The notes: generated from the letters alone by a model not told the origin. A stretch of DNA of 64,000 nucleotides from IMGVR_UViG_3300030102_006934:62001-126000, one strand, 5' to 3'; shown: positions 13,494 to 61,538, numbered from the stretch's first letter. Numbers and translations are program-made.

Positions 13494-14948
13494 ATGAGTA
13501 AATTAATTGATACTTTATTAACTAAAGATTCTCTAACAGAGAACGGTATGTCCACAAATTCTACAGCACTAAATTCATGCGTAGATTTATTTTTCAAAAT
13601 TGGTGCATTAAGAGGCGCTGAAAAAAACATAAAAATTAGTTCATTCACTAAAGCTTTTGGTGAAGACCCATTAACGGCCATGAAGATTCTTTTTTGGGCA
13701 AGAGACGTAAGGGGTGGTGCTGGAGAGCGAAAAACTTTTAGAGAGATATTAAGGTATTTAGTTAAAAACAAAACTGAAGTTGTTAAAAACAACATGGCTT
13801 TAATTCCTGAATACGGTAGATGGGACGACATGTTATATCTAATTGGAACTAAATTAGAGAAAGAAGCCCTAGGTGAAATCGCGTGTGCCTTAGAAGGTAA
13901 AAATGGTCTTTGCGCCAAGTGGATGCCTAGAGGCAACACTAAAAACAGGGAAAAGAAAAGATGGGCTTCGGTCATCAGAAAATATTTAGGATTAACTCCT
14001 AAATCTTACAGAAAATTATTATCTGAATTATCTAATACTGTTGAACAGTTAATGTGTTCTAAAAAATTCAAAGACATTAACTATTCTCACGTACCATCAA
14101 AGGCTATGTCTGATTATATGAGAGCTTTTGAAAGGAACGATAGTGAGGGTTTTAATAAATACTTAGATTCACTTAAAAATGGGGATACTAAAATTAACTC
14201 TGGGGCTATATACCCATATGATGTAACTAAGAACTTACAACATGGTTCTTCAGTAGGTGCAGTTGAGCAATGGAAATCATTACCAAACTATATGGAGGGT
14301 TCTAAAGAAAGAGTTTTACCAGTTGTTGATGTTTCTGGTTCTATGACTGTTCCAGCTGGTAATAACCCAAACCTATCTTGCTTAGATGTTTCGGTTTCTC
14401 TAGGTTTATATATTTCAGAAAGAAATGAAGGACCTTTTAAAGACGCCTTTTTTACTTTCTCAAATTCGCCACAGCTACAATATTTGAAGGGGGACCTTTC
14501 AGATAGGTTCACACAATTAAGTATGGCTGAATGGGGTGGGTCAACGAATATTGAAGCTACATTTAAAACTCTTTTAGATGTATCGGTAAATAACAATGTT
14601 AGTGCTGAAGAAATGCCTACAATGATATTAATACTCTCAGATATGGAATTCAATCAAGCCACCAGTATGGGTTGGAGCCAAGCTGAATCAGGCTGGAACC
14701 CAACGGTACAAGAAATGATTGAAAAAATGTATGATAATGCTGGTTACAAAATGCCAAAGATTGTATATTGGAACATTCAATCAAGACGGGACAATGTGCC
14801 AGTTAAATTTGATAAACAAGGTACCGCATTAGTTAGTGGGTTTAGCCCCGCATTACTAACCGCTTTATTATCTGGAAATGAAATCACACCATACAGTATT
14901 ATGAGTGATGTTATTAATTCAGAAAGATATGATAAAATAAAAATATAA
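13494..14948 (+). CDS. TROVE-like/vWA domain protein (DUF2828 family, Ro60-related)
   Basis: TENG, ARDVRGGAGER, YGRWDD, AKWMPR motifs; MIDAS DVSGS; ILSDMEF; YWN. Confidence 0.8.
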   Translation: MSKLIDTLLTKDSLTENGMSTNSTALNSCVDLFFKIGALRGAEKNIKISSFTKAFGEDPLTAMKILFWARDVRGGAGERKTFREILRYLVKNKTEVVKNNMALIPEYGRWDDMLYLIGTKLEKEALGEIACALEGKNGLCAKWMPRGNTKNREKKRWASVIRKYLGLTPKSYRKLLSELSNTVEQLMCSKKFKDINYSHVPSKAMSDYMRAFERNDSEGFNKYLDSLKNGDTKINSGAIYPYDVTKNLQHGSSVGAVEQWKSLPNYMEGSKERVLPVVDVSGSMTVPAGNNPNLSCLDVSVSLGLYISERNEGPFKDAFFTFSNSPQLQYLKGDLSDRFTQLSMAEWGGSTNIEATFKTLLDVSVNNNVSAEEMPTMILILSDMEFNQATSMGWSQAESGWNPTVQEMIEKMYDNAGYKMPKIVYWNIQSRRDNVPVKFDKQGTALVSGFSPALLTALLSGNEITPYSIMSDVINSERYDKIKI

Positions 14949-14950
14949 TT

Positions 14951-15088
14951 TAAAGAATGCATTCAGCAAACTCTTACTTAAACACAAATAGAGAAGAGAG
15001 GTTTAGTTGTTTCCTAGGTTTTTAAAACCACGATAAAAAAAATGACACCTTCACTACTGGGCTAGAAGTAAAAGCCCAAGCATTCTGA
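14951..15088 (+). ncRNA. putative structured RNA, TAAAGA-N4-TTCAGC family, copy 1
   Basis: AGAATGC (14954) pairs with GCATTCT (15080); internal hairpins; followed by terminator. Confidence 0.55.
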
Positions 15089-15094
15089 TTTATT

Positions 15095-15131
15095 AAGGGG
15101 ATTTGTAATTTTTTTTACAAATCCCTTTTTT
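15095..15131 (+). terminator. intrinsic terminator
   Basis: GGGATTTGTAA...TTACAAATCCC + T run. Confidence 0.75.
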
Positions 15132-17099: not shown

Positions 17100-18155
17100 A
17101 TGCCCAAAAAAGATTACTATAAAATACTAGGTGTTAACAGAGATTCTGATGCCAAAACAATTAAAAAGGCATATAGAAAGTTATCTAAAAAATACCATCC
17201 AGATGTAAATCCAGATAACAAAGAAGCTGAGGAAAAATTTAAAGACGTTGCTTCAGCATATGAGGTCCTTTCTGATAAAACTAAAAAGAGTAATTATGAT
17301 ACCTTTGGTGATGAGAATGGGCGACCCAATAACTCATTTAATGATACAAACATGTCTGATATATTTAGTCAGTTTGGTTTTGGTGGGAGAGCAAATCCAT
17401 TTACAAGACAAAGACAAACTAGGGGTAATGATTTGGCTTTAAATATAAAAATAAGTCTTGAGGATGTTCATAACGGACTGACTAAAAAATTCAAATATAG
17501 GAGGAACGCAAAGTGTGAACCATGTGACGGTGAAGGTGGAACAGAAAAATCAACTTGTCCAAATTGTAATGGTACTGGGTATCAAACATTCCAACAAAAA
17601 ACCCCAATGGGTATTATGAGACAAATGGTTGATTGTAGTACGTGCGAATCAACTGGTGAGGTAAATAAAAAAATGTGTAACTCATGTTCTGGAAATGGAG
17701 TTAAAAATAAAGAAGAATATATAGAGGTTAAAATACCAAAAGGTGTTACAGATAATGATATTATATCATATAATGGTATGGGTCATTCTATAAAGGGTGG
17801 TTCTTCGGGTAGACTAATAGTTAAATTATTAATCACAAAAAATGAGCACTTTACTAGAAATGGTGATGATTTAAAATATAATTTAAAATTAAAATACCCA
17901 CAATTGGTTTTAGGTGATAAGGTAGAAATACCAACAATAGACGGAACTAAAATAAGAGTTAAAATACCAAAGTTAAGTAATATTGGTGATAACTTAAGAA
18001 TCGTTGGTAAAGGATTAAATAGCAAAAAGGGTGATAATGTAGTTGGTGACATGTTAATAAATTTAGATATTGAAATGCCTAAAAAACTAGAAGAAGGTGA
18101 AGAAGAACTAATAGATAAATTAAAAATAATTAATGAAAGAGTTGCTAAAGAATAA
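17100..18155 (+). CDS. dnaJ: molecular chaperone DnaJ
   Basis: J domain with HPD, G/F region, four CxxCxGxG-type repeats, C-terminal domain. Confidence 0.95.
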
Positions 18156-20618: not shown

Positions 20619-20990
20619 GGGGCAAAATGGTTATTGATTATTTATAGTCGTGATTAGTAAGCATGCAGTGTTAGATTGGAAACACTTTAATTACCTATCA
20701 TTTTTCTTAGATGGAAACGAGTTTGACATCGATGAAAACTTCCTAGATACCGCTTCAGTAGAAGTTGGTACGGGAGAGGTTGCATTCGCCTAAGAGTAAT
20801 GATGATGGTGGTAATCCACCAACCCTCTTTGATAGTAGAGTTTAAAAAATTATCCAGAAGATTAGTTATCAGTAAAACGAACTGTAATAAGGGAACTGTT
20901 AAACTTTGCTGGGATTAGAAACCAGATAAGCATGTAGAAAACTCTTTATGAGTAAGTAAGACTAGAGTTCGAATCTCTATTGCTCCACTA
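20619..20990 (+). ncRNA. ssrA: tmRNA; probable tag (A)GNEFDIDENFLDTASVEVGTGEVAFA
   Basis: Acceptor stem GGGGCAA/TTGCTCC-A with G3.U wobble; T-arm TAGAG-TTCGAAT-CTCTA; internal frame 20713-20793 ending AFA-stop; TATATTTG promoter at 20573; CCA not encoded. Confidence 0.88.
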
Positions 20991-53224: not shown

Positions 53225-53686
53225 TTATTCGTTGAAAAAAAATGATATCGCTGGGAAATTACTCTCCTCATCGTTATTTAAACCACTCTGAGATATTGTT
53301 TCTGTTGCGTAGTATGTTTGACTAGACGTGACTACCTCTCTAGTAGATACTAATACATCGTCAACGTATACCTCCATAATAAACCAATAGTAGAGTTGCG
53401 GGTTAACAATAAACTTAACCTCATCACCACTTTTTAGTTGCCAAAATTCGTAATCCCACTCATAACCAGGTGTTATGTAGTCTTTGTAAATTCTAGGTGG
53501 ATCATTGTCGTAGTTAGGTGAACAACTAACCTCAATAAAATCTGAAGACCCTACTGGTGGAACTTCCATAAATGTTAGATGAAATCTAACTCTGTGAAAA
53601 TTATTGTCGTGTTTATCACAAGAAGAAGTGATTAAACTTAAGATTAATAATAGAAAGAGAAATAATTTGTTAAATAAAGTTTTCAT
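53225..53686 (-). CDS. lipoprotein
   Basis: Signal peptide with ITSS-C lipobox; TTTG..TATATTTG promoter. Confidence 0.65.
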   Translation of the reverse strand: MKTLFNKLFLFLLLILSLITSSCDKHDNNFHRVRFHLTFMEVPPVGSSDFIEVSCSPNYDNDPPRIYKDYITPGYEWDYEFWQLKSGDEVKFIVNPQLYYWFIMEVYVDDVLVSTREVVTSSQTYYATETISQSGLNNDEESNFPAISFFFNE

Positions 53687-53977: not shown

Positions 53978-54018
53978 TAAAAAAACTCATTCTCCAAAAG
54001 AAAATGAGTTTTTTTTTT
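53978..54018. terminator. bidirectional terminator hairpin
   Basis: A-run-CTCATT...AATGAG-T-run. Confidence 0.65.
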
Positions 54019-54019
54019 A

Positions 54020-54153
54020 CTTGGGGGAGGGTATCTAACCCTCCACAGCTTCTCTTCGTGATTAATACTTCTAAAAAGATCTTCAATATTAACCCTTATT
54101 ACCCGAAACCAACCTACTCGTCAGTAGGTCGCATATACTTTTCGCCACCCAAG
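54020..54153 (-). ncRNA. tRNA-like RNA with ~65-nt extended variable arm
   Basis: CTTGGG/CCCAAG acceptor-like stem, TGGCGAAAAGTATATGC D-arm-like, GACCTAC/GTAGGTT stem, GGAGGG-TTAGATA-CCCTCC T-arm-like; TTGACT..TATTAT upstream and terminator downstream. Confidence 0.55.
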
Positions 54154-54196
54154 ATTACTTAATAATAATAATAATAATAAAACTATTAGTCAACAC

Positions 54197-54580
54197 TTAC
54201 TCACTAAAATTAAATTTCTTTAGACATTTACCATTTAAAGATAATCCTATCATTTGGTTCTTTAAATTTTCCGTCTCTTCTAAGACAGCCTTTTTTGTCC
54301 ATACTTCACGTGTATCCATTAAATGACGAGTATCGAAACCAATTACCCACCCCCCTTTTAACTCTTCATTAGTAAAGTTACCTTCATTTATGTTGGGTCT
54401 CAAATCGAAAAATATCTCGTAAGTTCTACTAAAGGTTAATCCACCATGGACGTAAACTGGTATTTCATCGTATTCCACACCCCACATTGGATGGTCTTTA
54501 AAAATGATTACGTACCCATTACCCCATCCTTGTTTATTCCAATCGTTTTCTAAGACAAATGATAAAATTTTAATTTTCAT
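54197..54580 (-). CDS. conserved phage hypothetical protein
   Basis: GWGNGYV...HP..G...VHGGLTF...W.IGFDT.H motif. Confidence 0.7.
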   Translation of the reverse strand: MKIKILSFVLENDWNKQGWGNGYVIIFKDHPMWGVEYDEIPVYVHGGLTFSRTYEIFFDLRPNINEGNFTNEELKGGWVIGFDTRHLMDTREVWTKKAVLEETENLKNQMIGLSLNGKCLKKFNFSE

Positions 54581-57994: not shown

Positions 57995-58735
57995 TTATTT
58001 AGTTGTAGCCTTTAAATACTCTCTATTCATCCTAGCAATATTTTCTAATGAAATACCCTTTGGGCATTCTACCTCACATGCACCCGTATTAGTACAATTA
58101 CCAAACCCTTCTTTATCCATCTGATTAACCATGTTGATAACCCTTTCTTTGGACTCAACCTTACCTTGAGGTAACAGTGAAAACTGAGACACCTTAGCCC
58201 CAACAAATAACATAGCCGAACTATTCTTACAACTAGCAACACAAGCTCCACAACCTATACAAGTTGCTGCCTCAAAAGCCTTATCCGCATCTTCCTTTCT
58301 AATGGGTATTGTATTAGCATCTATTAAACTACCCGTGTTTATTGATACGTAACCACCAGATTGTTGAATTCTATCGAAAGCACTTCTATCTACCATTAAA
58401 TCTTTGATTATTGGGAAAGCTTTTGCCCTAAATGGCTCAACGTAGATGGTATCACCGTCATTGAAACTTCTCATGTGTAGTTGGCAAGTTGTAACGCCTT
58501 TATCTGGACCGTGAGGTTCACCGTTTATATACATTGAACACATACCACATATACCTTCTCTACAATCATGGTCGAAAGCTACTGGTTCTAACCCCTCACT
58601 GACTAGGTTACCATTTAAAACATCCATCATTTCTAGAAAAGACATATCACCAGAAATATTATTTATTTCATAGGTAACTATCTTTCCTTTAGATTTATAG
58701 TTTTTTTGACGCCAAACTTTTAAAATTAAATTCAC
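57995..58735 (-). CDS. sdhB: succinate dehydrogenase/fumarate reductase iron-sulfur subunit
   Basis: [41 protein letters not shown]. Confidence 0.93.
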
Positions 58736-58787: not shown

Positions 58788-59018
58788 TTATTTTTGATTT
58801 TTAGATTTAAATCTAGTACTTAAACTGTTTGTTTTGTGTTTAGTTTTTCTACTCTTAACTCTTTTTCTCCACATTATAAAAGAACTTTTCTTCATATACT
58901 TTCTCATCAGCTTTCTAACATCATTTTCTTTTATCCCAAACTGATATTCTATGGCTTCGAAAGGAGTTCTGTCCTCCCATGCCATCTCTATGATTCTATC
59001 TATGTCTTCTTTTGTCAA
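58788..59018 (-). CDS. TIGR03643/DUF2805 family protein
   Basis: RIIEMAWEDRTPFEAI..QFG..E...WRKRV..RKTKH. Confidence 0.8.
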   Translation of the reverse strand: MTKEDIDRIIEMAWEDRTPFEAIEYQFGIKENDVRKLMRKYMKKSSFIMWRKRVKSRKTKHKTNSLSTRFKSKNQK

Positions 59019-60076
59019 TTGGATATAGGTGCTTTAATTGGGGTGTCCGATTGATAATCAACTAATTCAAAATCAGTTATATCATACCCATCCAATACAC
59101 CATTATTAATTAATACCTTCGGTAATCTTTTAGGTTCTCTGGTTAGTTGTTCTTTCGCCTGTTCAATGTGATTCTTATACAAATGAACATCACCTAAATT
59201 ACCAACCAATTCATCAGGAACCATATTAACTTCTTTAGCGATGATTTCAAGTAGTAAACCATATGATGCTATGTTGAATGGTAAACCTAAGAATGTATCT
59301 ACTGAACGTTGATTCCACATTAGAGAGATTGCTCGTTTAGGTATTCCTGCTTTATCATATTGTTCTTCTCTAGACCATTGATTCATTCTAAATTCATAAC
59401 CCTTTTCCTCAAAGATTTTATATCTTTCATCCTCACTCAACTCTCTTGTGTAAACCTGAAATCCATAATGACAAGGTGGAAGTGTCATTTGGTCTAACTC
59501 ACCTACATTCCAAGCGTTAACCATTAATCTTCTAGAATCTGGATTTGTTTTGAGTTGTTCTATTAGGTTTGAGATTTGGTCATCTCTATTGAGTACTTTG
59601 TAAATAGGTATAGCATCTTCACCCTCTCCTACCCACTCACTCACATTGTTATCATAAATTATTTTCCAACTTCTCCATTGTTTACCATAGATGGGACCTA
59701 ATTCACCCCACTTCTTTGCGAACTCATCATCTGTTTTGATTAGACGAATAAATTCTTCTTTTGTGTAATAGGGTCCAAAGTATTGTGAGTCCCTGTTTTT
59801 GAGATATGATTGGTAAGCGTCCCCATCCCAAATATGACAATCATTATCAACAAGGTATTTGATGTTTGTGTCACCACGTAAGAACCATAACAATTCTGTT
59901 ACAATTCCTTTCCAATACATTTTCTTTGTTGTTAGTAGAGGGAACCCTTGATTCATTTTGTGTCTGATTTGTCTACCAAACACAGAGATTGTACCCGTAC
60001 CAGTACGGTCTTGTTTTTCTTTTCCGTTGTTTAAAATATCTTTTAATAATCTTAGGTAATCGTGTTCTATATTCAT
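59015..60076 (-). CDS. thyA: thymidylate synthase
   Basis: DRTGTGT, FPLLTTKK, ELLWFL.G, GPIYG.QWR, LPPCH, QRSVD.FLGLPFNIASY. Confidence 0.97.
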   Translation of the reverse strand: MNIEHDYLRLLKDILNNGKEKQDRTGTGTISVFGRQIRHKMNQGFPLLTTKKMYWKGIVTELLWFLRGDTNIKYLVDNDCHIWDGDAYQSYLKNRDSQYFGPYYTKEEFIRLIKTDDEFAKKWGELGPIYGKQWRSWKIIYDNNVSEWVGEGEDAIPIYKVLNRDDQISNLIEQLKTNPDSRRLMVNAWNVGELDQMTLPPCHYGFQVYTRELSEDERYKIFEEKGYEFRMNQWSREEQYDKAGIPKRAISLMWNQRSVDTFLGLPFNIASYGLLLEIIAKEVNMVPDELVGNLGDVHLYKNHIEQAKEQLTREPKRLPKVLINNGVLDGYDITDFELVDYQSDTPIKAPISN

Positions 60077-60632: not shown

Positions 60633-61538
60633 CTAACTTATCAATAGCCCACCATATTTTTTATTATACTCCAAAACGGATAACTCTTTGGCTTTAGCTT
60701 CCATCATGATATCTATGTTGTGTCCATAATTGTTAACTCTACTTCTAACATAGTCGTGATGAGCTCTGAACATTTTTTCATCTCTTGGTTCTGATACATG
60801 TACGGCTGGTACAATATTTTTAGGCCAAGTAGAGATAGCTATTTCTAAAGCTTCTTGGTGTGTCATACCACCATTGTGACAAGTATGGTGATGGTAATCA
60901 AATACTATTGGGATTCCAGTGTTCTCATGAATAAACATAAGGTCACGTACTGTGTACGCTGATTGTTTATCATCGTTTTCAATGGTTAAACGAGACTTTG
61001 TACCTTCATCTAGTGACTTGAAGTTATCTACCCATCTTTGTAAGGCTGAAGTTTTATCACCATATACACCACCAACATGTATGTTTATTTTATTGTAGGG
61101 TGTTCTAGATAGACCCATTAGGTCCATTATCTGTGAGTGTTTATTCAATTCTACTATTGTTTTTTTAACAACATTATCACTGGGGGATGCTAAAACATTA
61201 AATGGTCCTGGATGAAAACTCAAACGTTGGCCGTACTTGTTAGCCAAATTACCAATACCTGATAATAACACACTTATTTTTTTATAATCTGGTAAATCAA
61301 CAAATTCATATTCTGACATCCATGGAAACATATCCGAAGACATACGATAAAAGTTGATACCGTTTTTTTCATTCCATTTAATCACCTCGATTAAGTCTCT
61401 AATGTTTTGTAAAGCTAATTCTGATACATAAGAAATACCTTTCTCATCAAAAGTTTTACGAATCATTCCTCTGTTAGTGGTTATTTTGGGTTTTTGTGAC
61501 CCCAAAGTCATGTTAATACAAGCATATCCAATATTCAT
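60633..61538 (-). CDS. uvsE: UV DNA damage endonuclease
   Basis: IGYACIN, YRMSS, RLSFHPG, INIHVGG.YG, LTIENDD, FDYHHH, MMEAKAKE. Confidence 0.93.
   Translation of the reverse strand: MNIGYACINMTLGSQKPKITTNRGMIRKTFDEKGISYVSELALQNIRDLIEVIKWNEKNGINFYRMSSDMFPWMSEYEFVDLPDYKKISVLLSGIGNLANKYGQRLSFHPGPFNVLASPSDNVVKKTIVELNKHSQIMDLMGLSRTPYNKINIHVGGVYGDKTSALQRWVDNFKSLDEGTKSRLTIENDDKQSAYTVRDLMFIHENTGIPIVFDYHHHTCHNGGMTHQEALEIAISTWPKNIVPAVHVSEPRDEKMFRAHHDYVRSRVNNYGHNIDIMMEAKAKELSVLEYNKKYGGLLIS

What the first reader, a model, noticed from the sequence alone, without database searches (positions are those of the whole stretch)
54020..54195. tRNA-shaped 134-nt RNA with giant variable arm and non-canonical anticodon loop
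Seen on the minus strand: acceptor-like CTTGGG/CCCAAG, class-II-like D arm, a GACCTAC-TGACGA-GTAGGTT hairpin without a regular 7-nt loop, a ~65-nt arm (GGTTTC/GAAGCT closing, TTAATATT/AGTATTAA inner stem), and a T arm with loop TTAGATA. No CCA is encoded. It has TTGACT..TATTAT upstream and a terminator directly downstream. Inference: a tRNA mimic, for example a decoy for anticodon nucleases or a YrlA-like partner for the TROVE protein, rather than a decoding tRNA.
Basis: partly seen in the sequence, partly recalled or inferred. Interest (0 to 1): 0.7.

Follow-up and report, generated by a model that had tools for sequence, protein, structure and literature searches.

The report
Phage tRNA-Leu look-alike that cannot decode
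A marine jumbo phage carries a small, strongly conserved RNA gene that evolved from a leucine tRNA, keeps the tRNA shape, has lost its anticodon loop and has grown a long extra arm, so it is a tRNA mimic of an undescribed type whose job is still unknown.

Summary
On the minus strand at about 54154-54019 lies a ~134-nt RNA gene with a sigma-70-type promoter and an intrinsic terminator.

- **Structure.** Eight distinct homologues from marine metagenomes, two of them only 72-76% identical, support a five-helix cloverleaf. 97% of cells are paired and 9 pairs show compensatory double changes.
- **Origin.** A covariance model of the family also hits the phage's own tRNA-Leu(UAA) and a relative's tRNA-Leu(UAG), arm for arm. 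Other tRNAs score at noise. It is therefore a diverged paralogue of a class II tRNA-Leu.
- **Not a decoder.** The anticodon arm is a 7-bp stem capped by an invariant GACG tetraloop.
- **Long arm.** The variable arm is a 64-nt stem, internal loop and stem, with invariant AUAAG/ACGAA and a palindromic tip.
- **Selection.** The RNA stays 98% identical where the neighbouring gene has fallen to 75%.
- **CCA.** Its absence is normal here. The phage's true tRNAs also lack it, and the phage encodes a CCA-adding-type enzyme.
- **TROVE idea.** Poorly supported. The Ro-like gene lies 39 kb away on the other strand and has its own conserved RNA directly downstream. 48 other phage records with that protein lack this RNA.

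Function is inferred only: a non-decoding tRNA-Leu mimic that binds a tRNA-recognising protein.

The parts
54165..54193 (-). Sigma-70-type promoter: -35 TTGACT (54193-54188), 17-nt spacer, -10 TATTAT (54170-54165) inside a (TTA)n run. It starts right after the stop codon of the upstream 127-aa gene.
   Evidence: 10 of 12 consensus matches. TTGACT and the TTA run are conserved in all close relatives. It is absent in the divergent L015/L019 copies, which follow tRNA genes.
54019..54154 (-). The tRNA-like RNA, about 134-136 nt. The mature ends have not been determined.
   Evidence: It is a single copy in the 380-kb genome.
54148..54153 (-). Acceptor stem, 5' strand CUUGGG (tRNA positions 2-7). 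Position 1 (54154) is U here and G in L015/L019.
   Evidence: It pairs with 54025-54020 and is invariant in 8 of 8 sequences. It aligns to the acceptor stem of tRNA-Leu.
54131..54147 (-). U8, G9 and the D arm: 3-bp stem GCG/UGC with the 9-nt loop AAAAGUAUA. It contains A14, A15, a single G (the G18 equivalent) followed by U, and A21.
   Evidence: Invariant in all sequences. It aligns to the D arm of tRNA-Leu. The tertiary-pair assignments are inference from standard tRNA architecture.
54112..54129 (-). Anticodon-arm equivalent: a 7-bp stem capped by the invariant tetraloop GACG (54122-54119). It has no 7-nt loop and no anticodon.
   Evidence: Compensatory changes occur at pairs 30-39 (A-U to G-C) and 31-38 (C-G to U-A). 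Pair 32-37 is seen as U-A, U-G and C-G.
54047..54110 (-). Expanded variable arm (64 nt): a 6-bp outer stem, an asymmetric internal loop (5' side ending in invariant AUAAG, 54099-54095; 3' side ACGAAGA, 54059-54053), a 10-bp inner stem, and a 15-nt apical loop (54084-54070).
   Evidence: All 6 outer pairs vary while keeping pairing, and 2 of them change on both sides. Three inner pairs also change on both sides. The outer stem aligns to the variable-arm stem of tRNA-Leu.
54076..54083 (-). Self-complementary AAGAUCUU in the apical loop of the long arm. L015 has AGGCCU and L019 has UGAGCUCA at the same place.
   Evidence: The per-sequence shuffle p is only 0.05-0.23, so this is a lead for loop-loop dimerisation and not a finding.
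54026..54044 (-). T arm: 6-bp stem GGAGGG/CCCUCC with the 7-nt loop UUAGAUA. U54, U55, R57 and A58 are kept, and C56 is replaced by A.
   Evidence: Two stem pairs swap G-C and A-U in L015/L019. Loop position 57 is G or A.
54019..54025 (-). Acceptor stem, 3' strand CCCAAG, plus the next base (U; C in L017). An A-rich trailer follows.
53979..54015 (-). Intrinsic terminator: an A-tract, a hairpin and a U-tract.
   Evidence: Hairpins of different sequence occupy the same place in L010, L012, L015 and L019. The contig of run X20 also appears to carry a different hairpin there.

Best explanation
This is a real, separately transcribed gene for a ~134-nt non-decoding tRNA mimic. It arose by duplication of a phage class II tRNA-Leu gene.

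**Shown**
- It keeps the acceptor stem, the 3-bp D arm, the T arm and the outer part of the variable arm.
- The anticodon loop has been zipped into a 7-bp stem with an invariant GACG tetraloop.
- The variable arm has grown to 64 nt and has a conserved internal loop.
- The sequence is under much stronger constraint than the neighbouring genes.

**Inferred from tRNA architecture**
- It folds into a tRNA-like L shape. U8, A14, A15/U48, A21, G53, U54, U55, R57, A58 and C61 are all present.
- The G19-C56 elbow pair appears to be replaced by an isosteric U-A pair.

**Inferred, not tested**
- Like the phage's own CCA-less tRNAs, its ends are matured by RNase P, a 3' endonuclease and a CCA-adding enzyme, one of which the phage encodes.
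- It then acts off the ribosome as a sequence-specific ligand for a protein that reads the acceptor/D-arm/elbow face of tRNA-Leu. Having no anticodon loop, it can be neither decoded nor cut there.
- The most likely use is as a competitive decoy or sponge, for a host tRNA-directed defence or toxin enzyme or for LeuRS. The long arm would add a second protein-binding or dimerisation surface.
For: - **Gene signals.** Promoter and terminator flank the RNA. The terminator is kept as a hairpin of different sequences in relatives.
- **Structure.** 97% of cells are paired, 9 pairs are compensatory, and 0 of 500 shuffles reach this. RNAalifold agrees.
- **Descent from tRNA-Leu.** Model R1 hits the phage's tRNA-Leu(UAA) at 34.6 bits (E 8e-9) and L015's tRNA-Leu(UAG) at 24.2 bits (E 7e-6) over all five arms. 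tRNA-Gly and tRNA-Arg score 9.3 and 7.0 bits. The T stem GAGGG/CCCUC is the same as in the phage tRNA-Leu, and 5 of the 7 acceptor pairs match it.
- **Selection.** The RNA is 98.5% identical where the upstream gene is 75% identical (L012), and 97.8% against about 66% (L020). The 5' 29 nt, GACG, AUAAG, ACGAA and the T loop are invariant even in copies only 72-76% identical overall.
- **tRNA context.** In L015 it follows tRNA-Gly and tRNA-Leu, and in L019 it follows tRNA-Thr. L019 is homologous to the tRNA region of this genome.
- **CCA.** The phage's eight tRNAs lack encoded CCA. A PolyA_pol/CCA-type nucleotidyltransferase sits in its tRNA cluster.
- **RNA libraries.** Assemblies of five marine metatranscriptome runs contain the region. 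In X15 it is the deepest piece of 5.9 kb laid (9.8 against 2-5).
Against: - No experiment or read-level data show the mature ends, CCA addition, charging or any partner.
- The RNA-library evidence comes from contigs chosen for holding this sequence. It could include DNA or read-through from the upstream gene.
- The D and acceptor stems never vary, so their pairing is untested.
- The T stem has 6 bp rather than 5. The 1:72 position is U-U or U-C in the window clade. The base that would be the discriminator is not constant (A in 7 of 8 sequences, G in L019). These points argue against simple LeuRS recognition.
- Gene neighbourhoods give no partner. The only linked conserved gene is a predicted lipoprotein.
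- Related phages lack the RNA altogether: L002, L014, G001, G002 and the complete 362-kb G047.
Confidence: 0.6

Rival explanations
1. It is a Y-RNA-type adaptor, in effect a circularly permuted YrlA. The long arm (stem, internal loop with CGAA, stem) would bind the phage's Ro60/TROVE-like DUF2828 protein. The tRNA-like body would recruit a second protein.
For: - The phage encodes a TROVE-like protein with a vWA-type C-terminal domain at 13494-14948.
- Ro60 sites are described as a stem-bulge-stem carrying a conserved CGAA or GNCGAAN0-1G motif (PMC4201824; PMC12135203).
- The long arm has an invariant ACGAA in its internal loop, on the strand that runs into the T arm. YrlA has the same order.
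- YrlA also has a tRNA-like D/T/acceptor module (PMC4201824).
Against: - The RNA is about 39 kb from the gene and on the opposite strand. YrlA genes lie within 4 kb on the same strand.
- The RNA ends are at the acceptor, not in the Ro stem.
- The leading G of the motif is missing. CGAA is short enough that about 0.5 chance occurrences are expected in a 137-nt RNA of this composition (my estimate).
- The DUF2828 gene has its own conserved RNA directly downstream, with a covarying 5'/3' stem, in 8 phages.
- 0 of 48 viral records with a DUF2828 homologue have the RNA.
- No Rfam family matches.
- The complex prediction was not run by the tool, so it gives no evidence.
Confidence: 0.12
2. It is charged (with leucine, or serine through the long arm) and serves as an amino-acid donor away from the ribosome, as the dedicated non-proteinogenic tRNAs of cell-wall synthesis do. 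Alternatively it titrates the synthetase.
For: - It descends from tRNA-Leu and keeps A14, A15/U48 and the elbow.
- By established knowledge of bacterial LeuRS and SerRS, neither enzyme reads the anticodon.
- A is at the discriminator-equivalent position in 7 of 8 sequences.
- The phage encodes a CCA-adding-type enzyme.
Against: - L019 has G at that position.
- The D loop is 2 nt shorter than in tRNA-Leu, and the G18G19 pattern is altered.
- The T stem has 6 bp.
- No transferase gene is linked to it.
- Nothing here tests charging.
Confidence: 0.1
3. It is a decaying tRNA-Leu pseudogene, or merely a structured 3' UTR and terminator region of the upstream 127-aa gene.
For: tRNA finders do not call it. 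RNA-library contigs run from the upstream gene into it.
Against: - It is far better conserved than the flanking gene.
- Compensatory changes maintain four helices.
- It has its own promoter.
- It occurs without that gene in L015/L019.
- Homologues of the gene occur without it in L002 and L014.
Confidence: 0.02
4. It is a working decoder with an odd anticodon loop of 6 or 8 nt, for example for frameshift or four-base reading.
For: Opened by one or two pairs, the hairpin could show U-GAC-G-A or C-U-GACG-A-G loops.
Against: - The two pairs that would have to open covary: C-G to U-A, and U-A to C-G or U-G. The loop is therefore 4 nt.
- GACG is invariant.
- The T stem has 6 bp, and the 64-nt arm has no precedent in decoding tRNAs.
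Confidence: 0.02

Closest known systems
Class II bacterial/phage tRNA-Leu (its evolutionary parent)
   Same: It has a seven-position acceptor stem, U8, a 3-bp D stem, A14/A15/A21, a variable-arm stem and a T arm with U54-A58. A covariance model of the RNA hits two phage tRNA-Leu genes arm for arm. The T stem is the same and 5 of 7 acceptor pairs match the phage's tRNA-Leu(UAA).
   Different: It has no anticodon loop (7 bp plus GACG). The variable arm is 64 nt instead of about 15. The T stem has 6 bp. C56 is A and G19 is U. The D loop is 2 nt shorter. ARAGORN and the Rfam tRNA model do not recognise it.
Phage T4 RNAC / species 1 RNA (and RNAD)
   Same: T4 RNAC is a stable phage-encoded RNA of about 140 nt, with an acceptor-like stem and a canonical T arm, lying at the end of the tRNA cluster. 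Its function is still unknown (PMC3014915, PMC9697503). In L015/L019 the present RNA also sits at the end of a tRNA run.
   Different: There is no sequence or model similarity: R1 gives no hit on the T4 region. T4 RNAC has no D arm or anticodon-like arm in the tRNA arrangement. In the window the RNA is far from the tRNA cluster.
YrlA / bacterial and phage Y RNAs (Ro60 partners)
   Same: Both have a tRNA-like D/T/acceptor module joined to a stem-loop-stem carrying a CGAA-type motif. Both occur in phages that encode a Ro-like protein (PMC4201824, PMC12135203).
   Different: YrlA's 5' and 3' ends form the Ro stem and its acceptor is closed; here it is the reverse. YrlA is encoded within 4 kb of the Ro60 gene on the same strand; here it is 39 kb away on the other strand. 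It does not co-occur with DUF2828 in 48 records.
tmRNA tRNA-like domain
   Same: It is a non-canonical RNA with an acceptor stem and T arm that tRNA-processing enzymes recognise. The same phage encodes a tmRNA.
   Different: It has no mRNA-like reading frame, no pseudoknots and no G3-U70, and it has a complete D arm.

Membership tests
Canonical decoding tRNA | Cloverleaf with acceptor, D, anticodon and T arms in the standard order | tested here: met
   Five helices are in tRNA order. Four are supported by covariation, and all align to tRNA-Leu.
Canonical decoding tRNA | 5-bp anticodon stem with a 7-nt loop carrying U33 and an anticodon | tested here: not met
   The arm is a 7-bp stem with a 4-nt invariant GACG loop. 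The two extra pairs covary.
Canonical decoding tRNA | Recognised by tRNA detectors | tested here: not met
   ARAGORN finds none here, with or without intron mode. There is no Rfam tRNA hit even at E up to 10.
Canonical decoding tRNA | 7/5 acceptor/T-stem geometry and the T-loop consensus UUCRANY | tested here: inconclusive
   The T stem has 6 bp and the acceptor has 6 firm pairs plus a variable 1:72. The loop UUARAUA keeps U54, U55, R57 and A58 but has A56, with U in place of G19.
Canonical decoding tRNA | 3' CCA end and aminoacylation | not testable with these tools
   CCA is not encoded, but it is not encoded in the phage's true tRNAs either. Only contigs were available, not reads.
tRNA-Leu lineage (homology) | Significant full-length similarity to tRNA-Leu and not to other isoacceptors | tested here: met
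   R1 scores 34.6 bits (E 8e-9) and 24.2 bits (E 7e-6) on two tRNA-Leu genes. Gly scores 9.3 bits and Arg 7.0 bits.
tRNA-Leu lineage (homology) | A73 discriminator | tested here: inconclusive
   If 1:72 is counted as a pair, the next base is A in 7 of 8 sequences and G in L019. If it is not counted, the discriminator is U or C.
YrlA / Y RNA | Encoded within about 4 kb of the Ro60/TROVE gene, on the same strand | tested here: not met
   The gene is at 13494-14948 (+) and the RNA at 54154-54019 (-). The criterion is from PMC4201824.
YrlA / Y RNA | 5' and 3' ends pair to form the Ro-binding stem, and the acceptor-like stem is closed by a loop | tested here: not met
   The ends are at the acceptor stem, and the long arm is closed by a loop.
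YrlA / Y RNA | GNCGAAN0-1G / CGAA motif in a stem-bulge-stem | tested here: inconclusive
   An invariant ACGAA(G/U)A lies in the internal loop of the long arm, but the leading G is absent. A four-letter motif is expected by chance about once in two such RNAs.
YrlA / Y RNA | Co-occurrence with the Ro-like protein across genomes | tested here: not met
   0 of 48 viral records with a DUF2828 homologue have an R1 match.
YrlA / Y RNA | Binds Ro60 | not testable with these tools
   The tool did not fold the protein-RNA job.
T4 RNAC-type stable phage RNA | Sequence or structure-model similarity to T4 rnaC | tested here: not met
   R1 gives no hit on T4 66000-78000. blastn against 50,697 phage records gives no match.
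T4 RNAC-type stable phage RNA | A ~140-nt tRNA-like RNA placed at the end of the phage tRNA cluster | tested here: inconclusive
   This holds in L015 and L019. It does not hold in the window, where the tRNA cluster is about 200 kb away.

The most novel reading that the evidence does not exclude
The RNA is a modular adaptor built on a tRNA-Leu chassis. The closed, tRNA-shaped body docks to a tRNA-recognising enzyme. The overgrown variable arm has become a Ro-type stem-loop-stem (invariant ACGAA) that binds the phage's TROVE-like protein or another factor. Its palindromic tip joins two copies by a loop-loop kiss. It would then be a new, permuted class of Y-RNA-like ribonucleoprotein scaffold in marine jumbo phages, evolved independently of YrlA.
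Probability: 0.1. Interest if true: 0.85.

Novelty: new variant of a known kind. Interest (0 to 1): 0.66.

Why it matters
tRNA mimics are a recurring device in host-virus conflict and RNA quality control. Examples are tmRNA, YrlA, viral tRNA-like structures and the still-unexplained T4 RNAC. This one has an unusually clear pedigree (tRNA-Leu), a clean loss of decoding and a large conserved add-on. It sits in phages found in many marine metagenomes.

Because the parent and the derivative coexist in one genome, it offers a direct way to ask which tRNA surfaces a phage needs to copy and for which protein. It could also suggest what T4-type stable RNAs are for. A covariance model now exists to look for more members.

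Tried and rejected
- **Rfam.** Nothing real at gathering or permissive thresholds. The PyrR, rliE and similar hits are the terminator.
- **Hammerhead idea.** The CUGACGAG string suggested a hammerhead ribozyme. I dropped it: there is no Rfam hit, and covariation shows a plain hairpin.
- **Exact-pattern scans of IMG/VR.** Searches gave only chance matches, in GC-rich or coding contexts.
- **GenBank phages.** No similarity.
- **GTDB genomes.** No copy of the RNA.
- **Host tRNA-Leu scan.** A scan for host tRNA-Leu genes with the same acceptor strand hit mostly soil Acidobacteria and Planctomycetota. That says nothing about a marine host.
- **Synteny.**
  - The 127-aa upstream gene and the 901-aa gene have homologues without the RNA.
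  - The 217-aa metallophosphoesterase next to the RNA in L015/L019 has thousands of relatives without it.
  - The one gene linked in both clades is a predicted lipoprotein, which is not a plausible RNA partner.
- **Family scans.** Pfam and PHROG scans of the neighbours were uninformative.
- **RNA repair and TROVE families.** RtcB, Rnl-type RNA ligase, cREC and the TROVE Pfam family were not detected in the phage genome. The cREC search rang in no control genome, so that negative carries no weight.
- **Loop palindrome.** The statistics are weak.
- **Complex prediction.** The DUF2828 protein plus RNA job was not folded by the tool, so it is not evidence.
- **Internal-loop motifs.** K-turn and sarcin-ricin readings of the internal loop did not fit the consensus by inspection.

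Full report
**Where it is.** The window is bases 62001-126000 of a 380,343-bp IMG/VR virus record, a jumbo phage of about 30% G+C. Near-identical DNA is held by many marine metagenome runs. The finding lies between a 127-aa gene (54580-54197, minus strand) and a 67-aa ORF (53951-53748, minus strand).

**The observation.**
- A TTGACT-17-TATTAT promoter at 54193-54165 and an intrinsic terminator at 54015-53979.
- Between them, an RNA of about 134 nt running from about 54154 to 54019.
- Its minimum-energy fold is a multi-branched structure with z = -3.1 against shuffles.
- ARAGORN finds no tRNA here. The only call in the window is a tmRNA at 20619-20988.
- Rfam finds nothing at gathering thresholds. 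At E up to 10 it returns only matches to the terminator.

**Homologues.**
- The upstream 127-aa protein has few relatives. Contigs that encode the closest ones carry the RNA at the same place.
- More distant ones lack it: L002 at 53% identity and L014 at 51%.
- One exact-pattern scan of metagenome contigs gave six more copies.
- Two of these, L015 and L019, are only 76% and 72% identical to the window copy and sit in a different flank.
- In total there are eight distinct sequences (alignment A3).
- IMG/VR, GenBank phages and GTDB genomes gave no further copies.
- The genome has a single copy.

**Structure.** I wrote the cloverleaf as 39 pairs in six helices and counted them on A3.
- 97.1% of cells are standard pairs.
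- 9 pairs have changes on both sides, in 22 cells.
- No shuffle out of 500 reaches these values. Sliding the 3' partners by 1-3 columns drops pairing to 42-51%.
- RNAalifold, run independently, predicts the same helices except the short D stem.
- Compensatory changes fall in the anticodon-like hairpin, both stems of the long arm, and the T stem.
- The acceptor stem and the D stem never vary, so covariation says nothing about them.
- The anticodon-like hairpin is a 7-bp stem with a four-base loop, GACG, that is invariant. The two pairs nearest the loop are the ones that covary, so there is no anticodon loop.

**Origin.**
- A covariance model of the family (R1) also hits the phage's own tRNA-Leu(UAA) (genome 319934-320017) at 34.6 bits, E 8e-9.
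- It hits the tRNA-Leu(UAG) that lies 60 nt upstream of the RNA in L015 at 24.2 bits, E 7e-6.
- In both hits, acceptor aligns to acceptor, D to D, hairpin to anticodon arm, outer long-arm stem to variable-arm stem, and T to T. Other tRNAs in the same loci score 7-9 bits.
- The phage tRNA-Leu and the RNA share the T stem GAGGG/CCCUC, the string GGGUGGCG, and 5 of 7 acceptor pairs.
- The RNA is therefore a diverged paralogue of a class II tRNA-Leu.
- By standard tRNA numbering it retains U8, A14, A15 with U48, A21, G53, U54, U55, R57, A58 and C61.
- Where tRNAs have G19 and C56 it has U and A, which could form an isosteric pair. This last point is inference from known tRNA architecture, not a test.

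**Selection.**
- Where the upstream gene has diverged to 75% nucleotide and 67% amino-acid identity (L012), the RNA is 98.5% identical.
- Where the flank is about 66% identical (L020), the RNA is 97.8% identical.
- Between the two clades, whole blocks are identical: the first 29 nt, GACG, AGGUUG, AUAAG, ACGAA, the T loop and CCCCAAG. The stems between them have changed with compensation.
- That pattern points to sequence-specific recognition rather than structure alone.

**Context.**
- In L015 the RNA follows tRNA-Gly and tRNA-Leu. In L019 it follows tRNA-Thr.
- L019's genes are 40-72% identical to genes around the tRNA cluster of this genome at 313-344 kb. The ancestral site was therefore probably the tRNA cluster.
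- Downstream in L015/L019 lie two metallophosphoesterases and a cREC domain protein. Many relatives of that cassette lack the RNA.
- The only gene linked to the RNA in both clades is a 153/154-aa predicted lipoprotein.
- The phage's eight tRNAs do not encode CCA. A CCA-adding-type nucleotidyltransferase gene lies in the tRNA cluster.
- The missing CCA is therefore normal for this phage.

**Expression.** Only assembled contigs of public runs could be laid.
- Five marine RNA libraries hold the region.
- In X15 the piece 54011-54505 is the deepest in 5.9 kb (9.8 against 2-5).
- In X19 and X20 it is the only perfectly matching piece.
- In X20 the sequence after the A-run appears to change to a different hairpin.
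- This is compatible with transcription. It is biased by how the runs were chosen and does not show the ends.

**The TROVE idea.**
- Pfam TROVE is not found in the genome.
- The 484-aa protein at 13494-14948 has DUF2828, DUF7788 and weak vWA matches. Its Atlas neighbours include clusters that also match TROVE. It is thus a Ro60-like protein.
- It is 39 kb from the RNA and on the other strand.
- Directly downstream of it (14953-15088) lies another RNA, conserved at that place in eight divergent phages. Its 5'/3' closing stem shows compensatory changes at 5 of 7 pairs.
- Of 48 viral records with a DUF2828 homologue, none has an R1 match. These include a complete 362-kb relative.
- In favour of the idea, Ro60 sites are described as stem-bulge-stem elements with a CGAA motif. 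The long arm has exactly that outline with an invariant ACGAA.
- I rate this reading at about 0.12.

**A further lead.** The apical loop of the long arm holds a self-complementary run in all three lineages (AAGAUCUU, AGGCCU, UGAGCUCA). This would allow a loop-loop dimer, but shuffles give it often (p 0.05-0.23 each).

**Verdict.** This is a genuine, previously undescribed tRNA-Leu-derived mimic. In kind it is closest to T4 RNAC, whose role is also unknown, and to the tRNA-like module of YrlA. It is a member of neither family. The mechanism is inferred: matured like a tRNA, unable to decode, and used as a ligand or decoy for a protein that reads the tRNA-Leu body.

Noticed in passing
window 14953-15088 (+), terminator about 15097-15131: A second unannotated RNA lies directly 3' of the Ro60-like DUF2828/vWA gene (13494-14948). 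It is conserved at that place in eight divergent phage contigs. Its 5'/3' closing stem (AGAAUGC/GCAUUCU) covaries at 5 of 7 pairs, and a 3' hairpin has the conserved loop UAGAAGUAAA. It has no Rfam match. It is a likely Y-RNA-type partner of the Ro-like protein.
   Followed up: partly
window 13494-14948 (+): A Ro60/TROVE-like protein (DUF2828 + DUF7788, weak vWA). Homologues occur in 711 GenBank phage records, including Vibrio, Escherichia, Mycobacterium, Listeria and Staphylococcus phages.
   Followed up: partly
window 20619-20990 (+): A phage-encoded tmRNA (Rfam 59.7 bits) with the 26-residue tag GNEFDIDENFLDTASVEVGTGEVAFA.
   Followed up: no
L019 9751-10141 and 10115-10337: In the related contig, a tmRNA match overlaps the start of a group I intron match (99 bits). 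This suggests an intron-interrupted tmRNA gene.
   Followed up: no
genome 317985-321616 and 350953-351025 (outside the window): A tRNA cluster (Glu, Asp, Ser, Met, Leu, Arg and Ala, with Gly elsewhere), none with encoded CCA. A CCA-adding-type nucleotidyltransferase gene sits inside the cluster at 320407-320814. In intron mode ARAGORN also calls a tRNA-Gln with a 174-nt insert at 319497-319753.
   Followed up: partly
window 53225-53686 (-): A 153-aa predicted lipoprotein with a signal peptide ending in SSC. It is the only gene linked to the RNA in both clades (36% identical to L019 6092-6556).
   Followed up: partly
window 57995-58735 (-), 59015-60076 (-), 60633-61538 (-), 17100-18155 (+): Auxiliary genes: a succinate dehydrogenase/fumarate reductase-type Fe-S protein (Fer2_3 + Fer4), thymidylate synthase, UV endonuclease UvdE, and a full-length DnaJ.
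   Followed up: no
L028-L042 (freshwater and other contigs): A widespread phage cassette of an AAA_33 kinase-like gene, a 217-aa metallophosphoesterase, a gene of about 410 aa and often a cREC domain gene. It looks like an RNA-end-healing set. The 217-aa protein has more than 4,500 relatives.
   Followed up: no
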